From the IMG/VR virus record IMGVR_UViG_3300043449_002710, positions 62,001 through 126,000 of that record: DNA of 64,000 nt. The stretch is one strand, 5' to 3'. The notes below the pieces were generated by a model that saw only the letters and a list, made by a program, of their open reading frames with translations, searched no databases and was not told the origin of the DNA. Below, one piece after another: positions 12,801 through 63,352 of this stretch. Position numbers and translations under genes: made by a program. Each line of letters opens with the position of its first letter. Position 1 is the first letter of the stretch.

Positions 12801-13154
12801 GCGATTGTCGGATCAACCGTACAGAAGGCCTCGGGCTTGGCTACCCACGACTCCCTACAAGCCGCGCACGACGATACTCCAAGTGGCGGAAAGATTCTTT
12901 TCTTGAATCAAACGATTGTTGAAAACTTCAACTGGACCAAATCGGGAATCACAATCGAAGGCAAAGGCTACGGCAGCGTCTTGCAAGGCAACCTAACCAT
13001 GTCGGCAAGCTCGTGCATGGCGCTTGGGTTTAAAGTGGGTGGTGACATTAACTTGGCCGGAAGCAATGACAGTTTCTTCAGGCTCTGGATGGGTTCAAGC
13101 GGAACTTTCACCCCAGGCGGGGGTGGCAACCGTGTCGATATTATCGCAGAATAA
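9873..13154 (+). CDS. long tail fibre / receptor-binding protein
   Basis: 1093 aa, beta-rich; N-terminal G..V......LAVDIAP anchor motif; C-terminal beta-helix-like segment. Confidence 0.7.
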   Translation: MLRTLLHFRNFDSTQDLNSTLSGFFKRGIVTGGEVFPVPGVLAVDIAPFKLIGQDGMVVLETSNLTRVSVVAGQTNVVVFKSKYIPNSAPIAQFQVLELSAYQADPEIAYLTVFAILDLPPGITQVISSQIDYSSRDVIDAVCRMTLRGVLASTSFLPPIHNRPGDAYIINQNPPGLHVWDGVNWINITDTSALMALLTAHIQNARTNEKHLTDQEKEAAAGTSGSPSDTNRYVTDLDARIPTIFQTQALVGFPGSPSTINPFITSDYFLAQPQSKQFTAAQTVPYIELYPNDGPFFIGLEDVTSVKKYFKLYHATESREYVNSLGEAVTISAIQKTNGLPVDPLSDPTDNNGFYAGQLNLVLTGTVDLPVRVVYGQKKPFANILDPSKNLFKGSLLVPQPASAEMSQELLVRLKDISGRLFDDPMQTGESNVELKDSVDWLDLRFTQLKLIENTGNATRVNVTGVDVNMPDSKLEISVLKNLQINFSGCEIQFSGGSAGNIYESDGVTLLSTFAAVTPPVGEYQYYSVSLLPGSADSTNRLSLQVIVEAATAAGASLNAAPRASFIAGGCQIGQFAVHNNAGTVELAQILQNGIGSGYPGGILEAQPYDIPPADGFQAIVVEKFEQIPTDTNSGVKSTNATYDPLNQLYQISYDRTPTITTYGIDFTLSGAPSFELKVGDVVFAAGVIRKIVSVDPSQTAGQLDAVFSPDLFGAFCMLSQGVWTKDLVNYGKVSDGNLFSSIFGATTISKINVSYLDSKAAGDPVYDIQSTALVVCAASNSGLISDITDPNSTTYSPYYQRPYGMNQIYDYPLIENATSQRLHLAFFANPSIVPASGSCNLLEYQCSLYVDTLVYNGGLLNSAYCLSDGSGISNNCLPPTVVGGKTRLQLNFPYVLQSNPGQVGCDLEVYLDGKKIPRYYSGLTGAYWKEISTTTNTIEFHTDLSASATPIQVERRQGYNDSSLVNSLRLSAMADAIVGSTVQKASGLATHDSLQAAHDDTPSGGKILFLNQTIVENFNWTKSGITIEGKGYGSVLQGNLTMSASSCMALGFKVGGDINLAGSNDSFFRLWMGSSGTFTPGGGGNRVDIIAE

Positions 13155-13721
13155 TTGAGGTGGCTTGTGGGGAGATTAATTTCATCAACAGTTCCAACGG
13201 GGACAGTCAAAGCGTACTCAGGCACCACAGCCCCTCCTGGCTATTTACTTTGCGATGGATCTTTGCAAGGCACGACCCTTTACCCTGAGTTATTTGCCGT
13301 TATCCAATATAAGTATGGTGGCTCAGGTCTCAATTTCAGAGTTCCAGATTTAAAAGGCCGCGTGGTTGTCGGTAAGGATGACATGGGCGGTATTGCTGCT
13401 AATCGTATAACTGTATTAGGTTCTGGAATCAATGGAACACAGCTTGCGGCAAGTGGTGGATCGGAAACTCACGTTTTAACCACAGCCGAACTTCCAGCTC
13501 ACGATCACACAGCATCTGCAACGATCACCTATGCAGCCATGCAGTCTGCGGTTACTGCAGTTGTTCCTTTGATTAAATTTGCAGTCGAATCAGGAACCTC
13601 GGGGACGGTAGGCACAATTGCTTCTGACAGTGCGAGTATTGATATTGCCGATACCGGAAGCAATCAGGCGCACTCTAGCACTCAGCCATCCATGATAATG
13701 AACTACATTATCAAGTATTGA
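13155..13721 (+). CDS. phage tail collar domain protein
   Basis: PTGTVKAYSG...PPGYLLCDGS......YPELFAVI...YGG....F.VPDL.GRVVVG and GGSETH.LT..ELPAH.H, QPS...NYIIKY. Confidence 0.9.
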   Translation: MRWLVGRLISSTVPTGTVKAYSGTTAPPGYLLCDGSLQGTTLYPELFAVIQYKYGGSGLNFRVPDLKGRVVVGKDDMGGIAANRITVLGSGINGTQLAASGGSETHVLTTAELPAHDHTASATITYAAMQSAVTAVVPLIKFAVESGTSGTVGTIASDSASIDIADTGSNQAHSSTQPSMIMNYIIKY

Positions 13722-33170: not shown

Positions 33171-35549
33171 ATGGCAAAAACTAAGAAAGAAAAGGCTGAG
33201 TCTGCTCGCGAAGAGCGGTCTAAGGCCAGGGAAAAGAACGCCTCGAAGGCACAAGCAGATCTGATCAAGGAATACCGCGCTAAGATGCAAGCCTCGATCA
33301 ATCAGATCACCAAGAAACTCGATTGCAAGGCAATGGGTTTTGAACCACCCCAAGGAACCAATGGCGCGGTGAGCACAGGGGTTCTTTGCGTGGATCTGAT
33401 CACGGGTGGGGGGTTCCCTAAGCACCGTATGTCCACGGTGGCTGGAGACTCAGGCGCAGGCAAATCCACTTTAGTAGGCAAATCCGAAGGTACGGCTCTT
33501 CAGACGGGATTGATCTGCCATCATCTCGATCTCGAAGGCGCGGCTGACTATACCTGGATGCTCAAAAACGGAACTGACATGAATCTGTATTTGGGTAAAA
33601 GAGGCCAACCCAAGACTCTTTATTACATCCCAGATCTTCCATCTGGAGATGCTTCTTTCAGGTATATGTCTCGCGTCTTGGATGAAGCGATTGCAAACGG
33701 GGCTGAAGACCTCCCGTTTCTTTCAAATATCTTTTATCAAGACTCGATCCCGGCTTGTATCCCAGAGTCCATGCTTGAGAACGATGAAAAGGGCAATTCC
33801 CCCGACCTTGCGGTATTGACCTCTCGCGAAATTCCTCGCGTTAGAATGAAGCTGAAAAAAGCCAACGCAGCCTATGTTGCGATCAATCAAATCCGCGAGA
33901 ATCCCCGTGCGATGTTTGGTTGTTTGCATGGAGATACTCGAATTCGATTCGTAGATGGGCGAGTCCTTAAAATTAGGGATATTGTAAATCAAAAAATTGA
34001 AGGGGATATTTGGAGTTTCGATGAAAAATCTCAAACTCTAGTGCCTAAGAAAATTTTGAATTGGTTCAATAATGGCTATAGCTCTAGAGAACATTGGGTT
34101 TCGATTCGAACAGAATCTTTAGGTTCTCAACGTGGACATTATGACATTACGGTTACCCGTAACCATAAAATGCTTACCCCTTCTGGGGAATGGGTAGAAG
34201 CAGCTAGTCTCAAAGTAGGCGATAATTTGGTTAGCCAATACGAGGATCGAATTAACGGTACGTTGAGATCCTTTTTACTAGGTATGGCTGTAGGGGATTC
34301 GTCTCTGCACGAAAAATATAATCGTGGAGCCCTCACCCTTTGTAATAGGGAGCAACCTGAATACTTAGAATGGAAAGTAGACAAGTTAACCAAAGCGGGT
34401 ATTGAGTTCAAACAATACGGGGATCATGTTTTTATCTCTAAGCCACGCGCCGACTTTGAAATTTTAAGGCGGGAAACAACCAGAAGAAACCCGCTCAAGG
34501 TCTTGGATCAAATGACACCGCTGAGTATGGCTCTCTGGTTTATGGATGATGGATGTTATCATGGGAATACCCCGTTTTATAAAAATGAAAAACCTTATTT
34601 CAAACATGATGGATTCCTTTCTTTTAAACGCCTGAGAGAAGATCCGACCACTTTGGCTGGGATTGAAAAGTTTTTTAACCAAATGGGTTACTCAGGTTCA
34701 CTTTCTTCAGAGGGGGGATATCTTTTCAGTGCCGAAGGTTTTAGGAAACTCAGTCAGGATATCAGTCCGTTTGTTCCGCCTTGCATGTCTTATAAGCTCC
34801 TTCCAGAGCATAGGAATAATTACCAGGACTTTGACCTTTCTTTTGATGTGAAACAAAAAGTAGTCCCGGTAAAAATTCTTTGGGTTCGAGAGATTTCCGA
34901 CAAGAAGTCAAAAAGCTTGGGGAAATTCGATTTAGAGATTGAAGGAACCCATAATTATGTCGCTTGTAGTCAATACGGCGGTGTGGTTGTTCACAACTCG
35001 CCAATCTATGAGCCCGGGGGAAACGCACCTACTTTCTATGCGGATTTGAAGCTTTGGCTCACTCGAACCGGAAAAGCGAAAGCTTTGGACTTCAAAGGCG
35101 AGCACAAGATCACGCCCAAGGATTCCAAACTCTTTAAAGCCATGGGGGTTTCGATCGAGCAAAACCCAGATGGCACGGAAGACCGCTACTTCTACACTCA
35201 CGTCAAGACCGTCAAAAACCGAGTCTTCCCACCTTTGAAGGAAACTTACTTCAGAATGTGGATTGAAGAAAACGGTGGGGTGGGTCGCGGCATCGATCCG
35301 GTCTGGGATGTGATTCGTTTCTTTGAAGAGATCGGAATGTTGACTTTCGAGAGTATGAAAGAAGTTGTGCTCAAAGGTCAGATCTATGATTACTATGATC
35401 TGAAAAAAGAGATCCTCTCCAAGCCCGATCTTTATGAAGAAGCACGTTCACTTCTGGATTCAGGCAAAGCCTTCGATCTTTACTTCAACCGCTTGAGAGG
35501 CGGTGGTTTGGAAGTCGGTAACCCAGACCAAGAAGACGACGAAGAATAA
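33171..35549 (+). CDS. recA: RecA/UvsX-like recombinase, intein-containing
   Basis: STG...VDL..GGG.P, Walker A GDSGAGKST, Walker B-like FYQDSI, INQIREN..AMFG|SPIYEPGGNA..FYA. Confidence 0.92.
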   Translation: MAKTKKEKAESAREERSKAREKNASKAQADLIKEYRAKMQASINQITKKLDCKAMGFEPPQGTNGAVSTGVLCVDLITGGGFPKHRMSTVAGDSGAGKSTLVGKSEGTALQTGLICHHLDLEGAADYTWMLKNGTDMNLYLGKRGQPKTLYYIPDLPSGDASFRYMSRVLDEAIANGAEDLPFLSNIFYQDSIPACIPESMLENDEKGNSPDLAVLTSREIPRVRMKLKKANAAYVAINQIRENPRAMFGCLHGDTRIRFVDGRVLKIRDIVNQKIEGDIWSFDEKSQTLVPKKILNWFNNGYSSREHWVSIRTESLGSQRGHYDITVTRNHKMLTPSGEWVEAASLKVGDNLVSQYEDRINGTLRSFLLGMAVGDSSLHEKYNRGALTLCNREQPEYLEWKVDKLTKAGIEFKQYGDHVFISKPRADFEILRRETTRRNPLKVLDQMTPLSMALWFMDDGCYHGNTPFYKNEKPYFKHDGFLSFKRLREDPTTLAGIEKFFNQMGYSGSLSSEGGYLFSAEGFRKLSQDISPFVPPCMSYKLLPEHRNNYQDFDLSFDVKQKVVPVKILWVREISDKKSKSLGKFDLEIEGTHNYVACSQYGGVVVHNSPIYEPGGNAPTFYADLKLWLTRTGKAKALDFKGEHKITPKDSKLFKAMGVSIEQNPDGTEDRYFYTHVKTVKNRVFPPLKETYFRMWIEENGGVGRGIDPVWDVIRFFEEIGMLTFESMKEVVLKGQIYDYYDLKKEILSKPDLYEEARSLLDSGKAFDLYFNRLRGGGLEVGNPDQEDDEE
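33921..34997 (+). mobile_element. intein with LAGLIDADG homing endonuclease, 359 aa
   Basis: Starts C(LHGDTRI), ends VVHN followed by Ser; block B VTRNHKMLT; endonuclease blocks LLGMAVGDS and ALWFMDDG. Confidence 0.93.
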
Positions 35550-39207: not shown

Positions 39208-39293
39208 GGAGAGATACCCAAGCGGCCAAAGGGACCAGACTGTAAATCTGGCGGCGTATGCCTTCGAAGGTTCGAATCCTTCTCTCTCCACCA
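39208..39293 (+). tRNA. trnY: tRNA-Tyr (GTA)
   Basis: GGAGAGA/TCTCTCC acceptor, CCAGA-CTGTAAA-TCTGG anticodon arm, long variable arm, GGTTCGAATCC, encoded CCA. Confidence 0.97.
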
Positions 39294-39343
39294 TTAAAGT
39301 TGTCTGTTTCAATTTTAAAATTTTATGTTAGTTCTTTTGGTGT

Positions 39344-39419
39344 TCAGGGATAGCTCAGTTGGTAGAGCAACCGGCTGTTAACCGGTTGGTCGGGGGTTCG
39401 AATCCCTCTCCCTGAGCCA
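39344..39419 (+). tRNA. trnN: tRNA-Asn (GTT)
   Basis: TCAGGGA/TCCCTGA acceptor, ACCGG-CTGTTAA-CCGGT anticodon arm, GGTTCGAATCC, encoded CCA. Confidence 0.97.
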
Positions 39420-39514: not shown

Positions 39515-40234
39515 ATGGCTCTTTTGAATGTTCCGGCAAGTGTGGTGAAAGGCGTTCCAGCTCAAGTAACTCTGATTAAGTCAGACGTGCTTTTATTGCC
39601 AGAAGTTCAAGCCGACAGTTTTTGGACCCAAAACGGCGGAGAAGACATCTATCAAGTCTGGGTAGACTACCGCTCTAGCGTGGGTGCTCAGCGCAAGGTT
39701 TTGATTTTCAATTTTTCAGACGCTAACCCAACGACCTCTGTCGAGTTTTCCACTAAATCTAGACCTCAGTTTGAGATCTCCAAAATCACCTTAGTCGATT
39801 TCGACGGCGGCAAACTGGTCATCAATCGAGACGCTCTTCTCGTTACTTTCCCCACTCTAACTAATACCAATATTTCTCCTCAGTCAGAATCACCCCCACC
39901 CACTTGGGGCCCAGAGCTTTCTGGCTATTTCCTTCCAGATAATTGCGATCCGATAAATGACGAGATGTTTATTACCGCAGATATAGCACCGCCCGAATTT
40001 GGAGATCTTCAGTACGTTGTGAATGGCAGAGCTGTAAAATTTGCTGGAGTTAATTTGCCTGGTGGAATGGTAGCTGGTCAAATTTATTACATCGGTTCTG
40101 CAACCGCAAACAGCAATGTTTTTTACGGTATCAATCGCTGGCGTAAAATTTATCGAGATGCGGCTCTCACTCAACTGTTAGACATCACGAGCAGTGGATC
40201 TGGTGTGATTAACGCCACTGTTGCATTAGCTTAG
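39515..40234 (+). CDS. modular virion-type protein, family X copy 1
   Basis: Shared ~120-aa N-domain with 40255 and 53115 genes; C-terminal LPGGMVAGQIYYI...LLDITSSGSG module. Confidence 0.7.
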   Translation: MALLNVPASVVKGVPAQVTLIKSDVLLLPEVQADSFWTQNGGEDIYQVWVDYRSSVGAQRKVLIFNFSDANPTTSVEFSTKSRPQFEISKITLVDFDGGKLVINRDALLVTFPTLTNTNISPQSESPPPTWGPELSGYFLPDNCDPINDEMFITADIAPPEFGDLQYVVNGRAVKFAGVNLPGGMVAGQIYYIGSATANSNVFYGINRWRKIYRDAALTQLLDITSSGSGVINATVALA

Positions 40235-40254
40235 TTTTTAATAGAGAGGTAAAA

Positions 40255-41163
40255 ATGTCTCTTTTAAGCGTCCCACAAGTAACCAAAGGCAATCGGGCTC
40301 AAATTGCTTTGATCAAAGCGGATGTTCTCGCATTACCTGAAGTCCAAGCCGATAGCTTCTGGACTCAAAATGGTGGAGAAAATATCAGGCAGGTCTTGGT
40401 AGATTACCATTCTACGGCTGGAGGGCAGAGAAAAATTCTCACCTTTAATTTTGCCGATAGTACCCCTTCCGATTTTATTTGGTTTTCTGAAAAAGCGAGG
40501 TCAGACTTTCAGATCCTCAAGATCGTTTTGATTGACTATGATGGAGGTAGACTTACCATCAATCGCAAGAAGCTTCTGGCATCTTTCCCCAATCTGACTG
40601 CAGAAGACATCTCCCTAACACTATCTATCCTAGAAACAGTTCCATTTTCTTCATTGAATGATTATGGAAACTTGGCTCACTGGTCCGAAGGTGGAGAGGC
40701 CCAAGTTGTCACCCCAGGCGCAAATGGGATTTTTTCAAAAATAACCATGGCCTTAAAACGTGACCACTTTCGCTCGTCAGCGACAATGAATTCTAATCCT
40801 TCTCCATCTTTTGATGTTAACGTTAAAGTTTATGAATTTATTGGTGGAGCAATTGGACAGTTAATTGGAACATCCGAGCCCATTAATAGCGAAACTTTTA
40901 ATCAGTATCTAGGTGGTTTTACTTTTACAGATTCAGATCTTGTTACATTTAATTTTCTCTCATCCTTTTCTTTGGAATCAGGGACGAGCTATCTTGTTGT
41001 TTTAGCTCCCCTTAATACAGTGCCTACAGGAGGAAGCATTGTAGTCGGCGTGGCCGATCAATCCTATTCCGGTGGCGAAGTCTACGAATTTGATGATTAT
41101 TTAGCTATGATAAATGCATCCTCTTGGGGGCCTGGCTACGCAATTTATTTAAAGATTCAATAA
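40255..41163 (+). CDS. modular virion-type protein, family X copy 2
   Basis: LPEVQADSFWTQNGGE identical to copy 1; different beta-sandwich-like C-terminal domain. Confidence 0.7.
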   Translation: MSLLSVPQVTKGNRAQIALIKADVLALPEVQADSFWTQNGGENIRQVLVDYHSTAGGQRKILTFNFADSTPSDFIWFSEKARSDFQILKIVLIDYDGGRLTINRKKLLASFPNLTAEDISLTLSILETVPFSSLNDYGNLAHWSEGGEAQVVTPGANGIFSKITMALKRDHFRSSATMNSNPSPSFDVNVKVYEFIGGAIGQLIGTSEPINSETFNQYLGGFTFTDSDLVTFNFLSSFSLESGTSYLVVLAPLNTVPTGGSIVVGVADQSYSGGEVYEFDDYLAMINASSWGPGYAIYLKIQ

Positions 41164-44610: not shown

Positions 44611-45435
44611 TTGGGGAGGCTTACCCTTATGGATTTACTCAAGAAAATGACCGAATTTTTCTCGGGTCTTTATCTGCAAGCAATCACCAAGCAAGAACCC
44701 GCGAGGCCAAATCCTGAAGTCACCCTCTCGGCTATTAGGGAAGCCATCGATCCCAAAGAAGCCCCTTTAGAAGTGATCGCTCAACCCCCAGTAGCTGAAG
44801 TCACAAAGCTCACCAATTTACCCGAACAAGTCTTGTGGTGCCCTTTTGCGGTGAAACGTAAAGAAGCGATGACCACTCGCGGCAAGTACAGAAAGGGCTA
44901 CCCTGAAGGGGCAATCGTTCACTTTACGAGCGGCTCATCGGCTGAAAGTTCCTTTCAGCATGGGTTGAGATCGGGGTATTGTTTTTTTGTCATTCATGAG
45001 GATGGAACGATCTGGCAATCTTTTCCATTAGACTCTTGGGGTTATCATGCGGGCGAATCCTTCCACCCTAAATTAGGCAACGGGGTATCTCGTTATCTAG
45101 TTGGGATTGAAATTTCAAATGCTGGGGTTTTGACAAAAAAACCAGACGGTACTTTTGAAACTTGGTTCGGAAGATTGATCCCATCTTCTCAGGTCAGGCA
45201 TATCCCTAAAAAAATGGAAAACATGCAGCCTGGATATTATGCAAGATACACAGAGAACCAAGAGCAGAGTTTAAGAAAATTGGTTCAATGGCTAAAGATG
45301 AACCACCCCACGGTTTTTGATTACTCTTTGGTTCTTGGGCACGATGAGGTTGCGCCACAAAGGAAATCAGATCCCGGTGGGGCTTTATCCGTCACCATGG
45401 TTGACTTCAGGGATTCTTTGAAAAAGAGCGTCTAA
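44611..45435 (+). CDS. N-acetylmuramoyl-L-alanine amidase (Amidase_2), probable endolysin
   Basis: IVHFT, FVI..DGTI.Q......YHAG, VGIE, LGH.EVAP.RK.DPG Zn-amidase motifs; likely start ATG 44629. Confidence 0.88.
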   Translation: MGRLTLMDLLKKMTEFFSGLYLQAITKQEPARPNPEVTLSAIREAIDPKEAPLEVIAQPPVAEVTKLTNLPEQVLWCPFAVKRKEAMTTRGKYRKGYPEGAIVHFTSGSSAESSFQHGLRSGYCFFVIHEDGTIWQSFPLDSWGYHAGESFHPKLGNGVSRYLVGIEISNAGVLTKKPDGTFETWFGRLIPSSQVRHIPKKMENMQPGYYARYTENQEQSLRKLVQWLKMNHPTVFDYSLVLGHDEVAPQRKSDPGGALSVTMVDFRDSLKKSV

Positions 45436-45854: not shown

Positions 45855-47519
45855 GTGGGGATGAGGCATAACCAAAAATACACAACTGAACAGATCAATA
45901 CCTTGATCTTAGCTCGGGGTTATTTGGTTGACCCGGAATTTGTGTGGTTGGGAGCTAACAAAAGCGATATTTCTTTTTTTTGTCCCCGCCATGGCAAGAG
46001 GACTACACATTGGTCCAATTTCCGAAAAGGAAAAAGTTGTAAGTTGTGCGCTAGCGAGCAACAAGCTCAGAAAAAAATCAGTAAAATCGATTGGCCTACC
46101 CGGGTTAACGAACTTTTAAATGAAAGAAATTTTAGCCTGCTAGAAAGACCTGAAACACTTTATTCTTTCGCTAAAATAAAAGTACGCTGTAATGTGGATC
46201 AGCACGAGTGGTGGACTTGCTACAACCACCTAAAAGCGCACAAAAAAGGTTGTTTGGTTTGCGCGGGTTTATTGAAAACTTCTTTTACCGAGGTTAAAAA
46301 GAAACTGCAGGAAGAAGAGTTTAAAGTTACTGGGGATCTTCTTCCTATTACTTTCAACAGCCAAACTCCAATAGAAGTGATTTGTCCCCAAGGGCACGCT
46401 ACAACCACCAATGCAAACAAAGTGCAGCGAGGTTATGGCTGCAAATATTGCGCTGAAAAAGCACTCACCCAAGAAGAGGTCATACAACGCCTTAAAACAC
46501 GTGGGTTCACAAGCACGGATTCGTACAAAGGAGTGCATACTCCAATGCACTTAGTTTGCGAAAATGGGCACGATGTTTTTAAGTCCTACATGGCGATATG
46601 GCATGATGAAACTCAGTGCTCCTCTTGTCGTCCCCCTTATTCATCTAAGCCGGAAGAAGAAATTTCCTCTTGGCTGAAGACTCTCCTCCCAGAAAACGAT
46701 ATTTTAAGAAGCGATCGGATTCTTTTGGATGGGAATGAAGTGGACATTTACATTCCTTCCAAAAAGCTGGGGATTGAATTCAATGGTCTTTATTTTCATA
46801 CAGAAATTGCCTTGATGCGATCGGGGCGCACACTTCTGGAAGCTCAAGCTTACCATCAGAGTAAAACGGTTCGTGCGGCCCAAAAAGGGGTTCAGCTCAT
46901 CACCCTATGGGATTTCGAATGGGAGATGCGGCAGCAGGCTGTGAAAACAAGATTGAAATCTCTGTTGGGCCTAAATTCATTTAGAGTGGGTGCAAGAAAG
47001 ACCACACTCAGGTCTTTGAATAAAAATGAGTGGAGAACAGTTCGGGATTTCCTAAACACTTACCACATTCAAGGCTCAGCTTCTTTTAAGTATGCTTACG
47101 GGCTTTTTTTAAAAGACGAGTTGGTCAGCGTCATGACTTTTCAAAATCACCACAGACAAAACGTGGATAGAGGCACTTTGGTTTTGAATCGTTATTGTGT
47201 GAAAGAAGACTTTTCTATTAGTGGAGGAGCTACAAAACTCTTTCAATATGCACACAAAGAACTGTCATGCCCCATCTTGAGTTATTCTGACAATCGTTGG
47301 TCCACGGGTGATGTGTATGAAAAATTGGGATTTACTGCCATCAAAAGATCCAGGCCTGATTATTTTTACTCTTTTAGGGGGAAGGGACCTTTTTCGAAGC
47401 AGTCATTAAAGAAAACGCCCGAAGAAAGAAAGTCTGATAAAACAGAACGGGATTTGCGATTGGAACAGGATTACCAGCGGGTTTGGGACTGCGGAAAGAT
47501 CACTTGGCTTTATAAATAA
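45855..47519 (+). CDS. putative free-standing homing endonuclease (Hef-like): Zn-ribbon repeats + PD-(D/E)XK + GNAT-like domain
   Basis: Four C..GH...C..C repeats; S.PE.EI, EVDIYIPSKKLGIEFNGLYFH; C-terminal YSDNRWS.G.VY..LGF..PDY...DCG. Confidence 0.75.
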   Translation: MGMRHNQKYTTEQINTLILARGYLVDPEFVWLGANKSDISFFCPRHGKRTTHWSNFRKGKSCKLCASEQQAQKKISKIDWPTRVNELLNERNFSLLERPETLYSFAKIKVRCNVDQHEWWTCYNHLKAHKKGCLVCAGLLKTSFTEVKKKLQEEEFKVTGDLLPITFNSQTPIEVICPQGHATTTNANKVQRGYGCKYCAEKALTQEEVIQRLKTRGFTSTDSYKGVHTPMHLVCENGHDVFKSYMAIWHDETQCSSCRPPYSSKPEEEISSWLKTLLPENDILRSDRILLDGNEVDIYIPSKKLGIEFNGLYFHTEIALMRSGRTLLEAQAYHQSKTVRAAQKGVQLITLWDFEWEMRQQAVKTRLKSLLGLNSFRVGARKTTLRSLNKNEWRTVRDFLNTYHIQGSASFKYAYGLFLKDELVSVMTFQNHHRQNVDRGTLVLNRYCVKEDFSISGGATKLFQYAHKELSCPILSYSDNRWSTGDVYEKLGFTAIKRSRPDYFYSFRGKGPFSKQSLKKTPEERKSDKTERDLRLEQDYQRVWDCGKITWLYK

Positions 47520-52066: not shown

Positions 52067-53115
52067 TTAAAGATTGTAGGTACTCATGAGAGAAGCTTCG
52101 ATCGATGCACGATCAGTATCTCCCAGTGCTTTATTATAAATACGGAATTCGCAGATCTTGGCATTTAACCGATCCTGATCTGTAAAACCTCTTTGCCCGA
52201 TAGCTGTTTGACCTATGCCATTAGATGGCATGGGGAAACCGGCTCCTTGCAGAGCTTTCAAATCATAGCTTGCCCAACTGCTAACTGTGTATCTCAATGT
52301 TCCATTTTTATACACTTTGAGAGAATTTGAACTTTGGACGATTGAGACTAGAGAGTTTCCAGACCAGTTTGAAAAGCTGTCCACAGGATCAAGACTAGCT
52401 GGTTCAGTTTGTGAGTAAGACATCTGCTTAACAGCATAAACATCAGTAGTAATTGGACAGATCGGCGACCAGGAAAGCCCCAAAGAATTGGTAGAATGAC
52501 CAATCAGATCTTGGTAGTATTCCGAAGAAACCCAGTCAGCCACAACAGCAAAAATTGTAGCTTCAGAACTAGAAAACATCGAGGCCGAGCCAATCGCGTT
52601 TGGAAACACGAGACCGCCAGAACCAAATACCATTCCAGGATATCCATTCAAACTTGTAGCCGTGGTAATTGTTCCATCAACAGTCGGAGTTTGAATCGGG
52701 GAGTCTGACACCATATTCAGGATTGTAAGCCGTGAGCATTGAAGCTGGGATAGTATAGACGCCATTGTCGTAAGAGGTTCCAGTAATCTGATAAACTAGA
52801 CCCGATAAATCGATGCCATCTGTCATTATCGACAAGAAGCACTTTTTCTACAATCCAGGCATCTTTGGCAGAAGAAGAAAATACAATACTCGAAATTGGA
52901 TTGTTCTGCGAGTAATCAAATTTGAAAACTTTCGTTTGTCTTCCTGTTATAGACGCATAATGAACAAATACCGATTTAATATCGTTGTTGGATAAAGAAT
53001 TATCTCCCGTTTGAGATACGTAGTTCGCTAAGATAGTGGGGATTTGATTTTTGTTTAAAAAAACTGGGACGGAAGCTCCTTTCGAAGGAGCTGTAGGGAA
53101 ATTTAATAGATTCAT
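52067..53115 (-). pseudogene. family X copy 3, apparently split by frameshifts; C-terminal LamG-like domain
   Basis: N-domain homologous to 39515/40255 ends abruptly at LVDND (~52822); protein-like sequence continues in a second frame (52826-52677), then in ORF 52765-52067 (LNGYPGMVF, ICEFRIYNKAL...R..IE..L). Confidence 0.55.
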
Positions 53116-53130
53116 TTTTCTTTTCCATTC

Positions 53131-53163
53131 AAAAAAAGTGGCGCAAATTAGAATTTGCGCCAC
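53131..53163 (-). terminator. Rho-independent terminator after tail tube gene
   Basis: GTGGCGCAAATT / AATTTGCGCCAC 12-bp stem then 7 U on the minus strand. Confidence 0.85.
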
Positions 53164-53182: not shown

Positions 53183-53704
53183 TTAAAGGACCTTGATGCG
53201 AGAAACGTAGGCGAGCTGGCCAGAGATCTTGTGGATGTAGTTACCGTCAGCGGTCCAGGCTTCGGGGTTTTTGGTTTTGAGCCAGCAACCCGAATACTGA
53301 TAAATCCGATAAGGATCAGTTCCTTTGTAAAGATATTCTTGCACCACAAAAGGACGGGTCTGATCGGTCAGATCCGTGAACACGTCTGCGTAGCCCAAGG
53401 TCTTCTCAAGTTCCTGATCCCAGACTTCGGTGCGAGCGAAGCTCACTGTGAAGCCGGTTGCTTTGCCAGGAACATAATCCACAGGCTTACCCATGGTGAC
53501 TTTGGAAAGCTCATACACGTGCTCGCCATCGCGGTTGTAAGCGCCTTCAGGCTGCCAGGAGTTGATGCGGCCCACAAGATTTCCGCCGACAACCAAGGCG
53601 GCCCCATGGTAGGTCATTGTTGACGGAGAACCCGGGTCGTTAAAATCAATGGATGCGGTCTGGACCCCAAACTTGTTGGTGGCAAAAGGGCTCGGATTTG
53701 GCAT
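53183..53704 (-). CDS. tail tube protein
   Basis: 173 aa; VG.I.S..P....EHVYEL...P.DYVPG....V...RTE.W, PF...E....Y.Y.GCW pattern of myophage tube proteins; near the sheath gene. Confidence 0.75.
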   Translation of the reverse strand: MPNPSPFATNKFGVQTASIDFNDPGSPSTMTYHGAALVVGGNLVGRINSWQPEGAYNRDGEHVYELSKVTMGKPVDYVPGKATGFTVSFARTEVWDQELEKTLGYADVFTDLTDQTRPFVVQEYLYKGTDPYRIYQYSGCWLKTKNPEAWTADGNYIHKISGQLAYVSRIKVL

Positions 53705-53819: not shown

Positions 53820-55583
53820 ATGTTATTTGAAGATGCTTTAAGAGTTGCAAAAACTGCTGGATTGAAAGTTCTAGAAACTGGGCTTGTCAATTCTGCAAAA
53901 AGACAACTGATCGATGTTGTCTGTAAGGCTGGGCACTCACGTAGAATGCCTCGCAATAAATTCAGCAACAGACCCCCTCAAAATTGTCCTGTTTGTTTAA
54001 AAGAACAAGGCCCTGATCTGGATAAAATTCTAACTGATCCTAAAATCAAAACTAGGTTAGATGAGGGGTATCATCTCAAAAAAGCTTTTTCCGAAGATCA
54101 TGAAATCCAGTTAGAAGTTGTCTGCCCACAAGGTCACACCTATTCTATTGCTAAATGGAAATTTACTAAAGGGACTCAATGCGGCTCTTGCTCAGGTAAG
54201 AATCGGGACCTTACTTTTTTTAACATCAAGCAAGAAATGGAAGCCGAGGGTTTTGAAGTTTTATCGAAGGAATATCAAAATCAGTATCAAAAGCTCCATC
54301 TGATTGACCCTGACGGTAACGAACAATGGATCTCGGCAGATTCTTGGAAACGCGGTTATAGGTCAGAGCGAGGACCGACTCAGCAGACTAGAGACCGCAC
54401 AATCGAAGAAGTAAAAAAAGATTTTGAAGCCGAAGGCTATCAGCTTTTGGAAACCAAATTTATCAATGTTAAAACTAAAATGAGAGCAGTATGCCCTAAA
54501 GGGCATGAGTTTCGAGTGCATTGGAATCATTGGAAAGATGCTGGCGTTAGGTGCTCGGTTTGTTTTGGCACCCCTATGATGACTTTAAAAGAAATTCAAG
54601 AGCATCCAGAAACTATCCAATCTGGTTACCAAGCCTTACGCCGAGAGCGGATTGGTGCTCGTTTGGGTTGCGTTTTTTTATGTCCAAAAGGTCATGAATG
54701 GACTTCCACTCTCCCAGATTTTTTTTCAAAAAAATACCGATGTTCCTCTTGTAACCCGAAGTCTAGCTTGGCGGAATTGGAATTCCTAGAAGAAGTGAAG
54801 AAAACATATCCATCGGCAAGAAAAAGTTTGGATTTCGGTTTTGAAATCGACATCTACATTCCCGAGTTAAAATTAGGAATTGAGTATTGTGGTCTTTATT
54901 GGCATTGCGAAAAAGAAAAACAACCTAATGCACATAAGGACAAGTTTTTAAAAGCTCAAAAAAATGGAATCAAGCTGTTGACCATTTTTGAAGACGAGTG
55001 GTTTTATAAAAAAGAAATTGTCTTGCGAAGAATCTTGAGATCCAAAAAGATCTCGGCTCGCGAAACTCAATTCAAAGAGATATCTAAAGTGGAGGCAGAT
55101 AAATTTTTTGAGGAGAATCATCTTCAAGGAAAATCAGCTACTACAACAAAACAGCATTTTGGTCTTTTTTATCTAGGGTCTTTAGTTGGTGCTATTGCGT
55201 ATGGACCCCACCATAGAAAGGATACGGGAGAATGGGTGCTAAGCCGACTTTGTTTTGGAGAATTTGATATTGTCGGGGGTACGGAAAAGTTATTCAAAAA
55301 CAGTCTGCGTTATTTACCTAAAGTCAAACTAATCTCATGGTCCGACAACAGGTATTCTAACGGGTCAGTCTATGCGAGACTAGGTTTTATCAAAGAGGAG
55401 GATTTAGGTCCCGATTACTCTTATGTGAAACCTGGGCATTCCCCAATTCGGGTTTCCAAGCAATCCATGAAAAAAACCAAAGAAGAGCAAGCATCAGGGA
55501 AAACCGAGCACGAACTCCGATTAGCGCAGGATTGGTACAGGATCTACGACTGCGGCAAAATCCGGTGGGCTTACCCACGCTGA
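53820..55583 (+). CDS. putative free-standing homing endonuclease (Hef-like), paralogue of 45855..47519
   Basis: Four intact and one degenerate CP.GH...C..C repeats; SLAE.E, FEIDIYIPELKLGIEYCGLYWH; SWSDNRYS.GSVY..LGF..PDY...YDCG. Confidence 0.75.
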   Translation: MLFEDALRVAKTAGLKVLETGLVNSAKRQLIDVVCKAGHSRRMPRNKFSNRPPQNCPVCLKEQGPDLDKILTDPKIKTRLDEGYHLKKAFSEDHEIQLEVVCPQGHTYSIAKWKFTKGTQCGSCSGKNRDLTFFNIKQEMEAEGFEVLSKEYQNQYQKLHLIDPDGNEQWISADSWKRGYRSERGPTQQTRDRTIEEVKKDFEAEGYQLLETKFINVKTKMRAVCPKGHEFRVHWNHWKDAGVRCSVCFGTPMMTLKEIQEHPETIQSGYQALRRERIGARLGCVFLCPKGHEWTSTLPDFFSKKYRCSSCNPKSSLAELEFLEEVKKTYPSARKSLDFGFEIDIYIPELKLGIEYCGLYWHCEKEKQPNAHKDKFLKAQKNGIKLLTIFEDEWFYKKEIVLRRILRSKKISARETQFKEISKVEADKFFEENHLQGKSATTTKQHFGLFYLGSLVGAIAYGPHHRKDTGEWVLSRLCFGEFDIVGGTEKLFKNSLRYLPKVKLISWSDNRYSNGSVYARLGFIKEEDLGPDYSYVKPGHSPIRVSKQSMKKTKEEQASGKTEHELRLAQDWYRIYDCGKIRWAYPR

Positions 55584-59260: not shown

Positions 59261-60181
59261 TTGATAATGAAGAAATGTCGGTTTCCTGATTGCCCTGCCA
59301 CCAAACTTCAGCGTTTTGGCCTATGCAATAAACATCGGAAATGGGTTGAAAAAGGTTATTACTCGGAAGACCTTCGGCTTTTAAAACCCATGACGAGGAC
59401 GAGTACCCCCACGGTTTGCAAAATCAAGGACTGCAAAAACCCCCACGCCTCTCTCGGGTTTTGCGTGAAACATTACCGCAGATTTAAAGATGGGATTCTC
59501 GATGCAAACGGTGATCAGCTTAGGGAATTCAAACGCCCGATCAAATACCCCAAAGACATGGAATGCTTTTTGTGTGGGAAAAAAGGAAAGATCGTCAAAG
59601 GGTTTTGCCGGTTCCATTACCCTCAGTATTTAAAAGGCATCATCGACTACGATGGGGTGACATTAAGAAAATTAAAACGAGTGCAACGATACGAAAGTTG
59701 GCAGACGTGTAAAGCCAAAGGGTGCCGGAAAAAACCCAGAGCCAAAGGCTGGTGCAATTCCCATAAAGCTTCTTTTGACCGTGGGCTCTATAATCTCAAG
59801 GGCGAGAGGCTGGCTCCCTCGTTTGCTAAAAACAAAGACAGGCCTTGCTCTACTCCTCAATGTGGCCAGCCCGCTCACTGTAAAGGGCTATGCAGGCTTC
59901 ACTACAATCGGCAACGCACAGGCTATCTCGGGCCTGCTGGGTTTAAAAACGTGGGCCACCCCTGTAGTGAAACAGGGTGCTCAAAAGAAGCCTATTGTCG
60001 AACCCTTTGCGTGCAGCACTATTTCAAATGGAAGAGAAAGAATTCCCCTAAAACCAAGGCAAATCCTTCCGGTCAGATTTCTTCAGGTACTCTAGAAAAC
60101 TCGATTGCTTCTGATCTCGAACAGAAAGAATCGGGTTTTGAATCGGCCACTCGATCCGAAGCTCTGGGTCATTCCACATGA
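59261..60181 (+). CDS. six-repeat CCCH zinc-finger protein
   Basis: Six C-x(2-4)-C-x(8-10)-C-x2-H units; highly basic. Confidence 0.75.
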   Translation: MIMKKCRFPDCPATKLQRFGLCNKHRKWVEKGYYSEDLRLLKPMTRTSTPTVCKIKDCKNPHASLGFCVKHYRRFKDGILDANGDQLREFKRPIKYPKDMECFLCGKKGKIVKGFCRFHYPQYLKGIIDYDGVTLRKLKRVQRYESWQTCKAKGCRKKPRAKGWCNSHKASFDRGLYNLKGERLAPSFAKNKDRPCSTPQCGQPAHCKGLCRLHYNRQRTGYLGPAGFKNVGHPCSETGCSKEAYCRTLCVQHYFKWKRKNSPKTKANPSGQISSGTLENSIASDLEQKESGFESATRSEALGHST

Positions 60182-60614
60182 TCCCGCCCTCGGTTTTGGG
60201 ATTATAGAGCTGATCGACTTTGTAAAGGACATCGGCAGGCTCATCACCTAAGACGCAAAAGCCATGAGCAAAGCCTGCTGGAATCCAAAGAAGCTTACCA
60301 TTCATGTCGCTCAATTCCACGCCAACATGCTTTCCAAAAGTGGGACTATCGACGCGGATATCCACCGCGACATCCCAGATCCTGCCTCGGATAACGCCCA
60401 CAAGCTTTCCTTGCGCGGGTTGTTCTTGGTAGTGAAGCCCTCGGAGGATGCCTGGGGCCGAGCGGGAATGATTGTCTTGGGCGAAAAGGGCGGGAAGCCC
60501 TGCCTCCAAAAACTTTTCCTTTTGGAAGCGCTCCACAAAAAAACCTCGCTCATCGCCGTGGAGGTTCAACTCGACCAATTTCAGTCCTTCTAGTCTAAGA
60601 GAGGTGACTTTCAT
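60048..60614 (-). CDS. rmlC: dTDP-4-dehydrorhamnose 3,5-epimerase
   Basis: D.RGFF.E, QDNHSRS..G.LRGLHYQ, DVAVD.R..SPTFG, LWIP.GFAHGF. Confidence 0.96.
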   Translation of the reverse strand: MKVTSLRLEGLKLVELNLHGDERGFFVERFQKEKFLEAGLPALFAQDNHSRSAPGILRGLHYQEQPAQGKLVGVIRGRIWDVAVDIRVDSPTFGKHVGVELSDMNGKLLWIPAGFAHGFCVLGDEPADVLYKVDQLYNPKTEGGIMWNDPELRIEWPIQNPILSVRDQKQSSFLEYLKKSDRKDLPWF

Positions 60615-61464
60615 ATTCTTCCCAGCAATCGTCTAAGCCTCGTTTCCAAGGCGGAAGTTTAACTCCTAAAGTCTTAAAAACCTTTTCCGTGTTCAATTTA
60701 GAATTCTTGGGCCGTTGAGCGCGAGTCGGAAACTCGGCACTTTTAATCGGTCGAACCTTTAAGGGGATTTTTGCTCGGTGAAAAATGGCTTGGGCAAACT
60801 CATACCAAGATGTCTCCCCCGAATTACACAGATGATAAACCCCACTAGGAAACTCGGGAAGATCAAGCGCTCGATCCAAAGCTCTCAAAGTCGCTGCAGC
60901 TAAATGCGGAGCATAAGTTGGGGCACCGACTTGGTCAAAGACAATTGAGATCTCAGACATCTTTTCGCCAAGTCTCAGCATGGTTCGAAAGAAATTTTTT
61001 CCGTAAGCATCATAGACCCAAGAAGTCCGAAAGATGAGGCTCTTAGGAGCCCGCTGAAGAACCGAGGCTTCGCCTAGAAGCTTGGCAGCCCCGTAGGCAT
61101 TGATGGGCTTCGGTATATCGTCTTCGCGCCAAGGCAGAAAACCTGTGCCCGGGAAAACATAGTCTGTCGAGTAATGGATCAAGGGGATCTCTCGCTTGGC
61201 GCACCAATCGGCTAAAATCCCTGGCGCGTAGGCGTTCACCGCGAGATTGATTGAATTGTCCTGCTCCGCTTGATCGACTTGAGTGTAAGCCGCCGCATTG
61301 ATGATCGCTTTAGGCGGCTCTGGGCAAAGCCGAGTTAAATCTGCCTCCAAATGATCGAATAAACGAAAGTCGAGCTGCTGAGAATTAAACCCAACGCCTT
61401 CTGACCCCAGAAGATGGAGCAAAGCTCTTCCCACTTGGCCTGAGGCTCCAAGCACCGCAATCAC
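60595..61464 (-). CDS. rmlD: dTDP-4-dehydrorhamnose reductase
   Basis: [47 protein letters not shown]. Confidence 0.96.
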
Positions 61465-62339
61465 AGCACACGTCCTTCCTTGAGCACTTGCTCCAAATAA
61501 GTCCCGTAGGAAGTCTTACTATGGCGATCGGCATGAGCTTGAAGTTGATCCTCGGAGATGAATCCGTTTCGGTAGGCGATCTCTTCGAGACAGGCGATCT
61601 TCAAGCCTTGTCTTTTTTCAACCGTCTGCACAAAAAGTGAAGCGTCTAAGAGTGAGTCATAGGTTCCGCTATCGAGCCACGCCACCCCACGCCCCATTTT
61701 ATTGACCCTCAAGGCCCCTTGCCCTAAGTAGATTCGATTGATGTCGGTGATCTCCAATTCCCCGCGAGCCGAAGGCTTTAAGTTTTTCGCGATCTCCACT
61801 ACCTGCGAGTCATAGAAGTAAAGCCCGGTGACAGCCCAATTCGACTTGGGAAATTTTGGCTTTTCCTCGATACTCAAGGCTCTGCCTGTTCGGTCAAACT
61901 CGACCACCCCATAACGCTCAGGGTCGCTGACATGGTAGGCATAGATTTCAGCACCAGACTGAAGTTGGGTGGACAGTTGAAGATTTTTTCCCAACTGCTC
62001 AGAGTGAAAGATGTTGTCGCCTAAGATCAAACAGACTGGGGAATCTTGTAAGAACTCAGCCCCAAGCACAAAAGCCTGGGCGATCCCCTCAGGCCTAGGC
62101 TGTTCGACATACGAAAGCTCAACCCCAAAATCCGAACCATCCCCTAAGAGGGTTTGGATGCGGGGCAGGTCTTGAGGTGAGCTGATCACTAGGATCTCTC
62201 GGATGTCTGCAAGCATCAGAGTTGAAAGTGGGTAATAAATGGCGGGCTTGTCATAGACGGGCAAAAGCTGTTTGTTCACCGCTTTGGTGAGCGGGTAAAG
62301 CCTTGTCCCACTTCCTCCAGCCAAAACAATCCCTTTCAT
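61461..62339 (-). CDS. rmlA: glucose-1-phosphate thymidylyltransferase
   Basis: [58 protein letters not shown]; ATG 62339 overlaps the rmlB stop. Confidence 0.97.
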
Positions 62340-63352
62340 TTGGATCTCCTCATCGTCACTGCCTGACACCAAGCCTCGTTTTCGAGATACCACTGCACGG
62401 TGTCTTTCAACCCCGCTTCAAAATTCGAATACTTGCGCTTAAAACCTAATTCTCGCTCCGCCAAAGAGTCGTCAATCGCATAGCGGTGGTCATGACCTAG
62501 CCTGTCTGTCACGAATTTGATCGCGCTTTCATGCGGTTTCCCATCGGAGCGCGGGTGCATTTGATCGAGTTCTTGGCAAATCGTTTTGACGACCTCTCTA
62601 TTGTTTCTTTCGGATCTTCCGCCAAAACAATAAGTGGCCCCAGGTCTTCCTTTTTCCAAAGCCAAGGAAATGCCTCGGCAGTGATCCTCGACATGAATCC
62701 AGTCTCGAATATTCCCACCGTCTCCATAAAGAGGGAGGTATTTGTCGGAAAGAGCGCAAGTGATCATGTAGGGAATGAGCTTCTCTGGGAATTGTCTTGG
62801 TCCATAATTGTTTGAGCAGTTGGTGATGATTGTAGGCAGTCTATAAGTATGATGCCAAGCGCGGACCAACATATCACCTGAAGCTTTGGAAGCCGAGTAA
62901 GGAGAGTTAGGCAGGTATGGGCTTTCTTCTGTGAAAAATCCTGTTGAGCCTAAAGAACCGTAAACCTCATCGGTTGAGACTTGGAGAAACTTGAAGTCTT
63001 TTTTCCTGCCTTCGGTATTCCAATATTCCAAAGAAGCCTGCAAGAGAGTGAAGACGCCTTGGATATTGGTTTCGATGAAAGCAGACGGATGATCAATGGA
63101 GCGATCGACATGGGATTCTGCAGCGAAGTTCACCACCGCATCCACAGAATATCGATTCAAGATCCCGCTCACCAAAAAAGAATCACAGATGTTCCCTGTG
63201 ACAAAGTCTAGCTCCAAGCCCTCTAGGTTTTCTCTGTGTCCCGCGTAGGTCAGAGCATCGAGCACGACGATCTGATCGCCTTGCTCTAGTCTTTGACGAA
63301 CAAAGGTGCTTCCAATAAACCCAGCCGCCCCAGTCACAAGAAGAGTCGCCAT
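62336..63352 (-). CDS. rmlB: dTDP-glucose 4,6-dehydratase
   Basis: [60 protein letters not shown]. Confidence 0.97.

What the first reader, a model, noticed from the sequence alone, without database searches (positions are those of the whole stretch)
39515..41163. Protein family with a shared ~120-aa N-terminal docking domain and swappable C-terminal modules
Seen: 39515 and 40255 share near-identical stretches (LPEVQADSFWTQNGGE, QRK.L.FNF, L.D.DGG.L.INR) then diverge completely. A third, more distant copy at 53115 carries a LamG-like C-terminus. Inference: an undescribed virion anchor domain displaying interchangeable adhesin or lectin heads, i.e. a modular decoration or host-attachment system dispersed in the genome.
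Basis: partly seen in the sequence, partly recalled or inferred. Interest (0 to 1): 0.6.

Follow-up and report, generated by a model that had tools for sequence, protein, structure and literature searches.

The report
Phage fibre-docking domain with swappable heads
An uncultured jumbo phage carries four genes that share a previously uncatalogued ~110-residue Ig-like domain joined to unrelated binding modules, and the same domain occurs in hundreds of other phages, usually right after a tail-fibre gene, so it is most likely a plug that hangs interchangeable adhesin heads on a virion fibre.

Summary
Genes at 39515-40234 and 40255-41163 share a 61%-identical N-terminal ~120 aa and then diverge. 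A third copy lies on the minus strand (53115-52717), and a fourth lies outside the window, next to the major head gene. The third copy is not a fusion. Its N-domain ORF stops at 132 aa, and the weakly LamG-like ORF follows in the -1 frame.

An exhaustive profile search finds 637 protein clusters with this domain. It is almost always at residue 1. About 20% are domain-only, and the rest carry at least 70 unrelated C-termini (LamG, beta-propellers, fn3, discoidin, beta-helix). Pfam and PHROGs do not cover the domain, and two tblastn queries found it in no deposited phage record.

The AF2 model (pLDDT 93.6) is an Ig/FN3-like sandwich, closest to the N-domain of C. difficile Cwp6 (Z 10.9). In 11 of 14 IMG/VR loci the genes directly follow coiled-coil tail-fibre genes. 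This phage has one such fibre.

A complex prediction places the N-domain on that fibre's distal coiled-coil/knob junction (ipSAE 0.68, best control 0.00). Virion attachment is therefore predicted in silico, not demonstrated.

The parts
39515..40234 (+). Paralogue 1 (239 aa). The N-domain spans residues 1-~115. An unrelated ~120-aa C-terminal module follows, with no family match.
   Evidence: P0005 is the 239-aa gene call. No Pfam or PHROG hit.
40255..41163 (+). Paralogue 2 (302 aa). The N-domain spans residues 1-~115. The C-terminal ~180 aa is a beta-sandwich, lectin/CBM-like by shape only.
   Evidence: N-domain model pLDDT 93.6. C-terminus TM 0.7-0.77 to viral and bacterial beta-sandwich modules in the ESM Atlas (a lead only).
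52717..53115 (-). Paralogue 3: a domain-only ORF (132 aa), the most diverged copy.
   Evidence: E 1e-53 to the four-sequence profile; E 7e-22 to the 149-sequence profile.
52067..52765 (-). LamG-like ORF in the -1 frame relative to paralogue 3. The gene call is 215 aa from the ATG at 52714, 2 nt after the TGA of paralogue 3. It is either the detached head of a broken fusion or a stop-restart coupled partner.
   Evidence: Laminin_G_3 E 0.0011, below the cut-off; weak match to the C-terminus of the fused family member P0120; only itself in the database.
53131..53163 (-). Intrinsic-terminator hairpin (11-bp stem plus a T run) between the putative tail-tube gene and paralogue 3.
53183..53704 (-). 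173-aa putative tail-tube or virion structural protein, directly upstream of paralogue 3 (context).
   Evidence: phrog_985 'virion structural protein', E 5e-5. Language-model neighbours are phage tail protein, Phi812_tail_tube and DUF2001 clusters, score 0.96-0.97.
39208..39419 (+). tRNA-Tyr (39208-39293) and tRNA-Asn (39344-39419), immediately upstream of paralogue 1 (context).

Best explanation
The four genes belong to a large, uncatalogued phage family. Its shared ~110-residue Ig/FN3-like domain is a docking module, and the attached part is an exchangeable binding head.

Proposed mechanism (inferred):
- One beta-sheet face of the domain packs against the last heptads of a trimeric coiled-coil virion fibre, where the coiled coil meets the fibre's small C-terminal knob.
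- In this phage that fibre is the 804-aa protein at G000:C1:160033-162456, outside the window.
- The head hangs from the domain on a linker, which is often Gly/Ser-rich.
- Heads seen across the family include lectin-like sandwiches, LamG, beta-propellers, fn3, discoidin and a beta-helix.
- The paralogues compete for, or share, the same sockets, up to three per trimer. One fibre could therefore display several host-surface binders.
- Domain-only members would occupy sockets without a head, acting as a cap, stabiliser or assembly factor.

Shown:
- Homology and modularity.
- Purifying selection on the domain.
- The fold.
- Tandem arrays.
- Adjacency to fibre and virion genes.

Inferred:
- Presence in the virion.
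- The fibre as socket.
- The adhesive role of the heads.
For: Family and modularity:
- A profile of the four N-domains hits 637 representative clusters (369 at E<=1e-10). The match starts at residue 1-10 in all but two of the 150 listed, which run from 112 to 1064 aa.
- Of 148 members, 29 are domain-only. The other 114 with extensions carry 70 unrelated C-terminal clusters.
- Pfam on the members finds Laminin_G_3 (11 members), the DUF5122 propeller (7), FG-GAP, NHL, SGL, RCC1, fn3, He_PIG, F5_F8_type_C and a CBM.
- Two proteins carry the domain at the C-terminus instead, behind a beta-helix or two LamG-like domains. The domain is therefore an autonomous module.

Fold and selection:
- The AF2 model has pLDDT 93.6.
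- Synonymous sites are saturated while pN is 0.2-0.27.

Gene context in this phage:
- Paralogue 4 lies directly upstream of the major head gene (phrog_2522, E 9e-55).
- Paralogue 3 lies directly after the putative tube gene and its terminator.

Gene context elsewhere:
- Of the 18 other loci, 16 carry 2-5 copies, mostly in tandem.
- In 11 of 14 IMG/VR loci a 280-936-aa coiled-coil fibre gene ends 40-110 nt upstream on the same strand. Paralogous fibres with the Phage Tail Collar domain alternate with family members.
- The module order is TerL, portal, two small genes, fibre, family genes, an SU10-adaptor-like gene, then a large tail-fibre-like gene.
- This phage encodes one homologue of that fibre, including its C-terminal knob.

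Complex prediction (3 x the fibre's last 160 aa plus the N-domain of paralogue 2):
- ipSAE was 0.68, 0.66 and 0.76, against 0.00 for the best of 3 controls.
- Partner pLDDT was at least 87, and the runs agree in at least 86% of contacts.
- In the tool's calibration this mark was reached by 58 of 80 solved complexes and 2 of 110 mismatched pairs. Those counts hold only roughly for this job.
- The fibre residues in contact include alignment-invariant positions (E70, A71, next to L62).
Against: - There is no experimental evidence that any member is in a virion.
- In this genome none of the four copies is adjacent to the fibre gene. The nearest is 27 kb away.
- The predicted interface residues on the N-domain are less conserved than the rest of the domain (mean column entropy 2.73 against 1.79). 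That fits either co-evolving specificity or a modelling artefact.
- The nearly invariant polar residues (K11, K21, N43, Q58, D94, D96) mostly lie outside the predicted interface. They may mark the true functional site.
- The controls did not include an unrelated coiled coil, so a generic sheet-on-coiled-coil artefact is not excluded.
- The job used my own unpaired alignments and a 3+1 stoichiometry, unlike the tool's calibration set.
- L008, L006 and L009 show no such fibre within 10 kb. L005 is not listed here because L021, a second locus on the same 154.8-kb contig, was left out of the neighbour clustering, so that contig was only partly examined.
Confidence: 0.5

Rival explanations
1. Lattice decoration of the Hoc or pb10 type. 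The N-domain binds directly to a repeated site on the capsid (major head protein) or on the tail surface, not to a fibre, and displays the heads all over the particle.
For: Paralogue 4 is the gene immediately upstream of the major head gene. Paralogue 3 follows the putative tail-tube gene, and the array in L005 also follows a Phi812_tail_tube-like gene. Several paralogues with one anchor would suit a lattice with hundreds of equivalent sites. Hair-like decorations on the head and sheath are reported for several jumbo phages (PMC7824862).
Against: In 11 of 14 smaller-phage loci the neighbour is a fibre gene, not a capsid gene. The only complex tested, with the fibre, passed with clean controls. 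No capsid or sheath pair was tested, and no sheath gene could be identified in this contig.
Confidence: 0.2
2. Tail-fibre assembly or tip proteins of the Tfa or gp38 kind. The domain binds the fibre's C-terminal end mainly to help it fold or trimerise. Domain-only members are pure chaperones, and the heads are secondary additions.
For: The genes sit directly downstream of fibre genes, and in some loci fibre and family genes alternate one to one. About 20% of members are domain-only. The predicted contact is at the fibre's distal end.
Against: There is no sequence match to the Caudo_TAP or gp38 families. Heads of 150-950 aa, such as propellers, LamG and a beta-helix, are not chaperone-like. In this genome the genes are not next to the fibre. 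The fold is a stable stand-alone Ig-like sandwich.
Confidence: 0.15
3. Not virion-associated. The shared domain is a generic Ig-like surface-binding module, as in bacterial cell-wall proteins such as Cwp6. The proteins act in or on the infected cell, for example in cell-envelope binding or superinfection exclusion.
For: The closest fold is the N-domain of a bacterial cell-wall protein (5j72, Z 10.9, rmsd 2.4 over 102 residues; Cwp6_N clusters at TM 0.68). No virion proteomics exist.
Against: By eye the N-termini begin directly with the domain and show no obvious signal peptide (no signal-peptide predictor was run). Generic adhesion Ig domains are usually internal and tandem, whereas this one is single and almost always at residue 1. 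The family is consistently placed in structural and fibre modules. The complex prediction passed.
Confidence: 0.08

Closest known systems
T2/S16-type gp38 adhesins and Mu/P2-type Tfa proteins (fibre-tip proteins encoded after the fibre gene)
   Same: They have a conserved N-terminal part that attaches to the distal end of a trimeric fibre, and a variable C-terminal part that determines what is bound. Their gene lies directly downstream of the fibre gene, as this family does in most related loci. This comparison rests on my own knowledge of those systems.
   Different: There is no sequence match to those families. The fold here is an Ig/FN3-like sandwich. The heads are large, monomer-type lectin and propeller modules. 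Several paralogues occur per genome, and in this phage they are dispersed away from the fibre gene.
Branched or modular receptor-binding proteins with conserved N-terminal anchors (Klebsiella phage RBP1/RBP2 docking peptides, CBA120/G7C tailspike sets)
   Same: They follow the same plug-and-socket logic: a conserved N-terminal anchor and exchangeable receptor-binding bodies, with several RBPs on one particle (PMC6872550 and PMC13352976, seen; otherwise my own knowledge).
   Different: Those anchors are parts of trimeric tailspikes that dock on another RBP or on the baseplate. Here the anchor is a compact Ig-like domain predicted to sit on a coiled coil, and the heads are mostly non-enzymatic binding domains.
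Capsid decoration proteins T5 pb10 and T4 Hoc
   Same: They share the architecture of one anchoring domain plus flexibly linked, outward-facing Ig or lectin-type domains thought to mediate weak adhesion (my own knowledge).
   Different: pb10 and Hoc bind capsid hexamers, and each is a single gene with a fixed head. In Hoc the anchor is C-terminal. No homology to either was detected.
Cwp6_N (PF21465), the N-terminal domain of the Clostridioides difficile cell-wall protein Cwp6 (PDB 5j72)
   Same: It is the best structural match, clearly above the generic FN3 background (Z 10.9 against <=6.9 for the rest. TM 0.68 to Cwp6_N clusters).
   Different: No sequence relationship was detected. The Pfam scans of 149 members did not report PF21465, and the family profile did not hit 5j72 at E<=10. 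The context is a bacterial surface protein with CWB2 repeats and an amidase. To my knowledge the function of that domain is itself unknown.

Membership tests
The new N-domain family itself (profile A3, 149 sequences) | A significant match of all window copies to the family profile, at the protein's N-terminus. | tested here: met
   hmmsearch E-values were 5e-39 (paralogue 1), 6e-38 (paralogue 2), 7e-22 (paralogue 3) and 9e-39 (paralogue 4). In each case the match starts at the first residue of the gene.
Cwp6_N (PF21465) | A sequence match to the Pfam model above its gathering score. | tested here: not met
   There was no Pfam hit to the N-domain in the window proteins at E<=1 or among 149 members at E<=1e-3. 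The profile against PDB sequences did not find 5j72.
Cwp6_N (PF21465) | The same fold. | tested here: met
   VIA-align gave Z 10.9, rmsd 2.4 A over 102 of 122 residues to 5j72 residues 11-118. Foldseek gave E 5e-4 and TMq 0.66. Atlas clusters carrying PF21465 matched at TM 0.68.
Laminin_G_3 / concanavalin-like lectin (ORF 52067-52765) | A Pfam match above the gathering score. | tested here: inconclusive
   E 0.0011 and 19.6 bits, against a cut-off of 27.6. Only the C-terminal half of the model is matched. No fold prediction was available for this ORF.
gp38-type adhesin or Tfa-type fibre assembly protein | Homology to GP38 or Caudo_TAP families. | tested here: not met
   No such Pfam or PHROG hits were found in the window proteins or in 149 members.
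gp38-type adhesin or Tfa-type fibre assembly protein | The gene lies immediately downstream of the cognate fibre gene. | tested here: inconclusive
   This is met in 11 of 14 IMG/VR loci. It is not met for any of the four copies in this genome, where the fibre lies at 160 kb and the copies at 101-133 kb.
gp38-type adhesin or Tfa-type fibre assembly protein | Binds the distal end of the fibre. | tested here: inconclusive
   This is supported in silico only: ipSAE 0.68 against 0.00 for the best control. Interface residues on the N-domain are poorly conserved. A binding assay is needed.
Hoc/pb10-type capsid decoration | Binds assembled capsid at a defined lattice site. | not tested
Adjacency of paralogue 4 to the major head gene is the only hint.
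Programmed -1 frameshift product (paralogue 3 plus LamG ORF) | A slippery X XXY YYZ heptamer in the frame overlap. | tested here: not met
   I read the 79-nt overlap 52795-52717 codon by codon and found no canonical heptamer. By eye there is also no Shine-Dalgarno-like sequence before either candidate ATG of the LamG ORF, unlike paralogues 2 and 4.

The most novel reading that the evidence does not exclude
The domain and the coiled-coil/knob junction form a general plug-and-socket system. It would be used by very different phages (small podovirus-like genomes and jumbo phages). One trimeric fibre would accept up to three heads drawn from a pool of paralogues, giving combinatorial, rapidly exchangeable host-surface binding. 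Domain-only proteins would tune occupancy. That would be a new class of receptor-binding architecture and a ready-made scaffold for phage display and host-range engineering.
Probability: 0.3. Interest if true: 0.75.

Novelty: new variant of a known kind. Interest (0 to 1): 0.6.

Why it matters
Host recognition is the least predictable part of phage genomes, and most uncultured-phage adhesins are unannotated. This domain marks several hundred protein clusters that are currently 'hypothetical' or are misnamed after their head, for example 'streptogramin lyase' or 'delta-60 repeat protein'. If it is a fibre-docking plug, it gives three things:
- an annotation handle for finding receptor-binding heads in metagenomic phages;
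- a testable model for how one fibre can carry several specificities;
- a compact, well-folded anchor that could be used to graft new binders onto a virion.

The general principle of a conserved anchor with variable heads is already well known for phage receptor-binding proteins. The novelty is therefore the domain, its predicted socket and its breadth, not the logic.

Tried and rejected
- Single-sequence AF2 of the whole of paralogue 2 was useless (pLDDT 39.8). Only the N-domain was modelled well, so there are no models of the heads.
- The word-index homologue search found only this genome's own proteins, both with the N-domain and with the LamG ORF.
- The viral-contig scan with the four-sequence alignment found nothing. 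The 149-sequence alignment was too diverse for pattern search. Two subfamily alignments worked.
- tblastn of two N-domains against 50,697 deposited phage records gave no match.
- Foldseek against BFVD gave only generic Ig-like hits.
- I looked for the sheath and tube by Pfam families PF04984, PF17482 and PF06841 and by PaBG proteins. Only the capsid protein and gp081 homologues were found. PF26461 is not in the library.
- Searching the records behind L005-L009 for the capsid and tube proteins failed because those records are not held.
- I rejected a programmed -1 frameshift for paralogue 3/LamG because there is no slippery heptamer.
- I rejected recent duplication because synonymous sites are saturated.
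- I considered a tube-binding decoration and set it aside, because a myovirus-type tube would be covered by a sheath. No sheath gene was identified here, so this is not excluded.
It is reported as evidence against the predicted interface.

Full report
**Where the window lies**

The window is bases 62001-126000 of a 223,260-bp linear IMG/VR virus contig, estimated 81% complete. Its major head protein (outside the window) is 36% identical to that of the jumbo Pseudomonas myovirus PaBG. Most other proteins have no PHROG match.

**The observation**

- The ORF from the ATG at 39515 to 40234 (239 aa) and the ORF 40255-41163 (302 aa) share 61% identity over their first ~121 residues (E 1e-49). They share nothing significant afterwards.
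- The third copy starts at 53115 on the minus strand and is 29-37% identical to the others.
- A fourth copy (445 aa, 75% identical N-domain) lies outside the window at contig 131982-133316, minus strand.
- An HMM search of all six frames of the contig finds these four and no more.
- Between paralogues 1, 2 and 4, synonymous differences are saturated (pS 0.71-0.79) while non-synonymous differences are 0.20-0.27. The copies are therefore old, and the domain is under purifying selection.

**The third copy is split**

- Its N-domain frame still aligns with the family through the last strand, then runs into TGA at 52719-52717 after 132 residues.
- The weakly LamG-like ORF is open from 52795 in the -1 frame. 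Gene callers start it at the ATG at 52714 (215 aa).
- I found no slippery heptamer in the 79-nt overlap and no Shine-Dalgarno-like sequence before the LamG ORF, although paralogues 2 and 4 have clear ones.
- The joined length (~350 aa) would be typical of the family. The C-terminus of the fused member P0120 weakly resembles this ORF.
- I therefore read it as a fusion broken by a frameshift (a real mutation or an assembly error) or as a stop-restart coupled pair.
- A similar split (a 90-aa N-domain ORF, then an 82-aa Laminin_G_3 ORF with an ATGA overlap) occurs in an unrelated contig (L006).

**The family**

- Pfam and PHROGs give nothing for the N-domain.
- The word-index search found only this genome's own proteins.
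- The exhaustive profile search found 637 representative clusters at E<=1e-3 and 369 at E<=1e-10. The match begins at the first residues in all but two of the 150 listed, whose lengths run from 112 to 1064 aa.
- Of 148 members, 29 are domain-only (<=130 aa). The 114 with extensions fall into 70 unrelated C-terminal clusters, 55 of them singletons. Twenty-five have an obvious Gly/Ser-rich linker.
- Pfam recognises some heads: Laminin_G_3, DUF5122, FG-GAP, NHL, SGL, RCC1 and Reg_prop propellers, DUF285, fn3, He_PIG, F5/8 type C and a glycogen-binding CBM.
- Two proteins carry the domain at their C-terminus, one behind a right-handed beta-helix and one behind two LamG-like domains. It is therefore an autonomous module.
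- PHROGs matched only 2 of 149 N-domains, both marginally.
- Two tblastn queries found nothing in 50,697 deposited phage records.
- Sources name members after their heads, or as 'hypothetical'.

**The fold**

- With the 149-sequence alignment, AF2 gives a confident model (pLDDT 93.6, pTM 0.84). It is a beta-sandwich with short inserted helices.
- Foldseek and VIA-align place it among Ig/FN3-like domains. One match stands out: the N-terminal domain of C. difficile Cwp6 (5j72 residues 11-118, Z 10.9, rmsd 2.4 A over 102 residues; the next match has Z 6.9).
- The ESM Atlas search returns Cwp6_N (PF21465) clusters at TM 0.68.
- There is no detectable sequence relationship to that domain.
- The fold alone assigns no function.

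**Gene context**

In this genome:
- Paralogue 3 follows a 173-aa putative tail-tube gene and a strong terminator hairpin.
- Paralogue 4 is the gene directly upstream of the major head gene and is followed by its own terminator-like hairpin.
- Paralogues 1 and 2 follow two tRNA genes.
- In the closest relative contig (L009, 82% identity in a 927/1019-aa virion protein), the single member sits directly upstream of tail-fibre-like and virion structural genes.

Across 18 other loci:
- The family occurs in 2-5 copies in 16 of the 18, mostly in tandem.
- I clustered all flanking ORFs. In 11 of 14 IMG/VR loci a 280-936-aa protein ends 40-110 nt upstream on the same strand, and shorter paralogues of it alternate with family genes.
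- These proteins are coiled-coil fibres. Some end in the Phage Tail Collar domain (E 1e-19 to 2e-21). Others end in a conserved ~85-residue knob.
- The module reads large terminase, portal, two small genes, fibre, family genes, an SU10-adaptor-like gene and a ~1500-aa tail-fibre-like gene.

The family is thus embedded in the virion/fibre module of small phages as well as in jumbo phages.

**The predicted socket**

- This phage has exactly one homologue of that fibre: 804 aa at contig 160033-162456, minus strand. It has the same N-terminus, repeats and C-terminal knob.
- Cultured-phage relatives of its repeats are annotated as tail fibre protein.
- The model supports binding. ipSAE was 0.68, 0.66 and 0.76, against 0.00 for the best of three controls. 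Partner pLDDT was at least 87, and the runs agree in at least 86% of contacts.
- The tool states that this mark was reached by 58 of 80 solved complexes and 2 of 110 mismatched pairs. It also states that these counts hold only roughly for a job of this kind.
- One sheet face of the domain (residues 46-63, 88-105, and 32-33) lies on the last coiled-coil heptads (fragment residues 64-72) of one fibre chain. It also touches a second chain and the knob.
- The contacted fibre positions include alignment-invariant residues.
- Against this, the contacting residues of the N-domain are more variable than the rest of the domain (entropy 2.73 against 1.79). Most nearly invariant polar residues (K11, K21, N43, Q58, D94, D96) lie outside the interface, and the D-x-D-G-G loop looks like a possible metal site. 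The interface is therefore either a co-evolving specificity surface or wrong in detail.
- No unrelated coiled coil was among the controls.

**Conclusion**

The modular 'anchor plus swappable heads' reading fits all the evidence.
- The most likely socket is a coiled-coil virion fibre rather than the capsid, sheath or tube.
- Presence in the virion and binding are predictions.
- The logic is that of known modular receptor-binding systems (gp38 and Tfa tip proteins, branched RBPs, pb10 and Hoc). What is new is the domain family, its breadth, the monomer-type lectin and propeller heads, and the predicted docking on a coiled coil.
- I rate it a new variant of a known kind, of moderate to good interest.

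Noticed in passing
window 33171-35549 (+): A 792-aa UvsX-like recombinase is interrupted by a LAGLIDADG homing-endonuclease segment (residues ~368-543), which is probably an intein.
   Followed up: no
window 45855-47519 (+), 53820-55583 (+), 59261-60181 (+); L011:2809-4566 (-): There are several large homing-endonuclease genes. Two are 554- and 587-aa paralogues (phrog_559 HNH, with a Mom-like C-terminal part). One is wedged between the putative tube gene and a Gly-rich tail-fibre-like gene. Another, a GIY-YIG/Mom-like fusion, lies directly after the major head gene. They break up the structural module.
   Followed up: partly
window 60048-63352 (-): Four genes form a nucleotide-sugar pathway: a dTDP-4-dehydrorhamnose 3,5-epimerase, two nucleotide-sugar epimerase/dehydratase-like proteins, and a phrog_3980 protein of unknown function. 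A related epimerase also lies near the family array in L006. This may indicate phage-directed modification of surface glycans or of the virion.
   Followed up: no
window 9873-13721 (+): A 1093-aa tail-fibre-like protein is followed by a 188-aa protein carrying the genome's only Phage Tail Collar domain (13200-13367; E 1.4e-18). No family member lies beside it.
   Followed up: partly
L011:7341-7658 (-) (contig 133341-133658), just upstream of paralogue 4: A 105-aa ORF begins with a collagen-like G-x-x stretch and then a beta-rich region, which by eye resembles the C-terminal knob of BclA/C1q-like fibre proteins. It has no Pfam or PHROG hit. It may be a fragment of a fibre gene.
   Followed up: no
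L006:8947-9464 (+): In an unrelated metagenomic phage, a truncated N-domain ORF (90 aa) overlaps by ATGA an 82-aa Laminin_G_3 ORF in the -1 frame. This is the same kind of split as at window 52067-53115. Splits between this domain and a LamG head may recur.
   Followed up: partly
window 44611-45435 (+): An amidase-type endolysin (phrog_1794/1493, E 6e-9) lies 3.4 kb downstream of paralogues 1 and 2.
   Followed up: no
N-domain columns K11, K21, D33, N43, S53, G56, Q58, D94, D96 (numbering of paralogue 2): These polar residues are nearly invariant across 149 diverse members, and they include a D-x-D-G-G loop. Most lie outside the predicted fibre interface. This may be a metal- or ligand-binding site, or the true docking surface.
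   Followed up: partly
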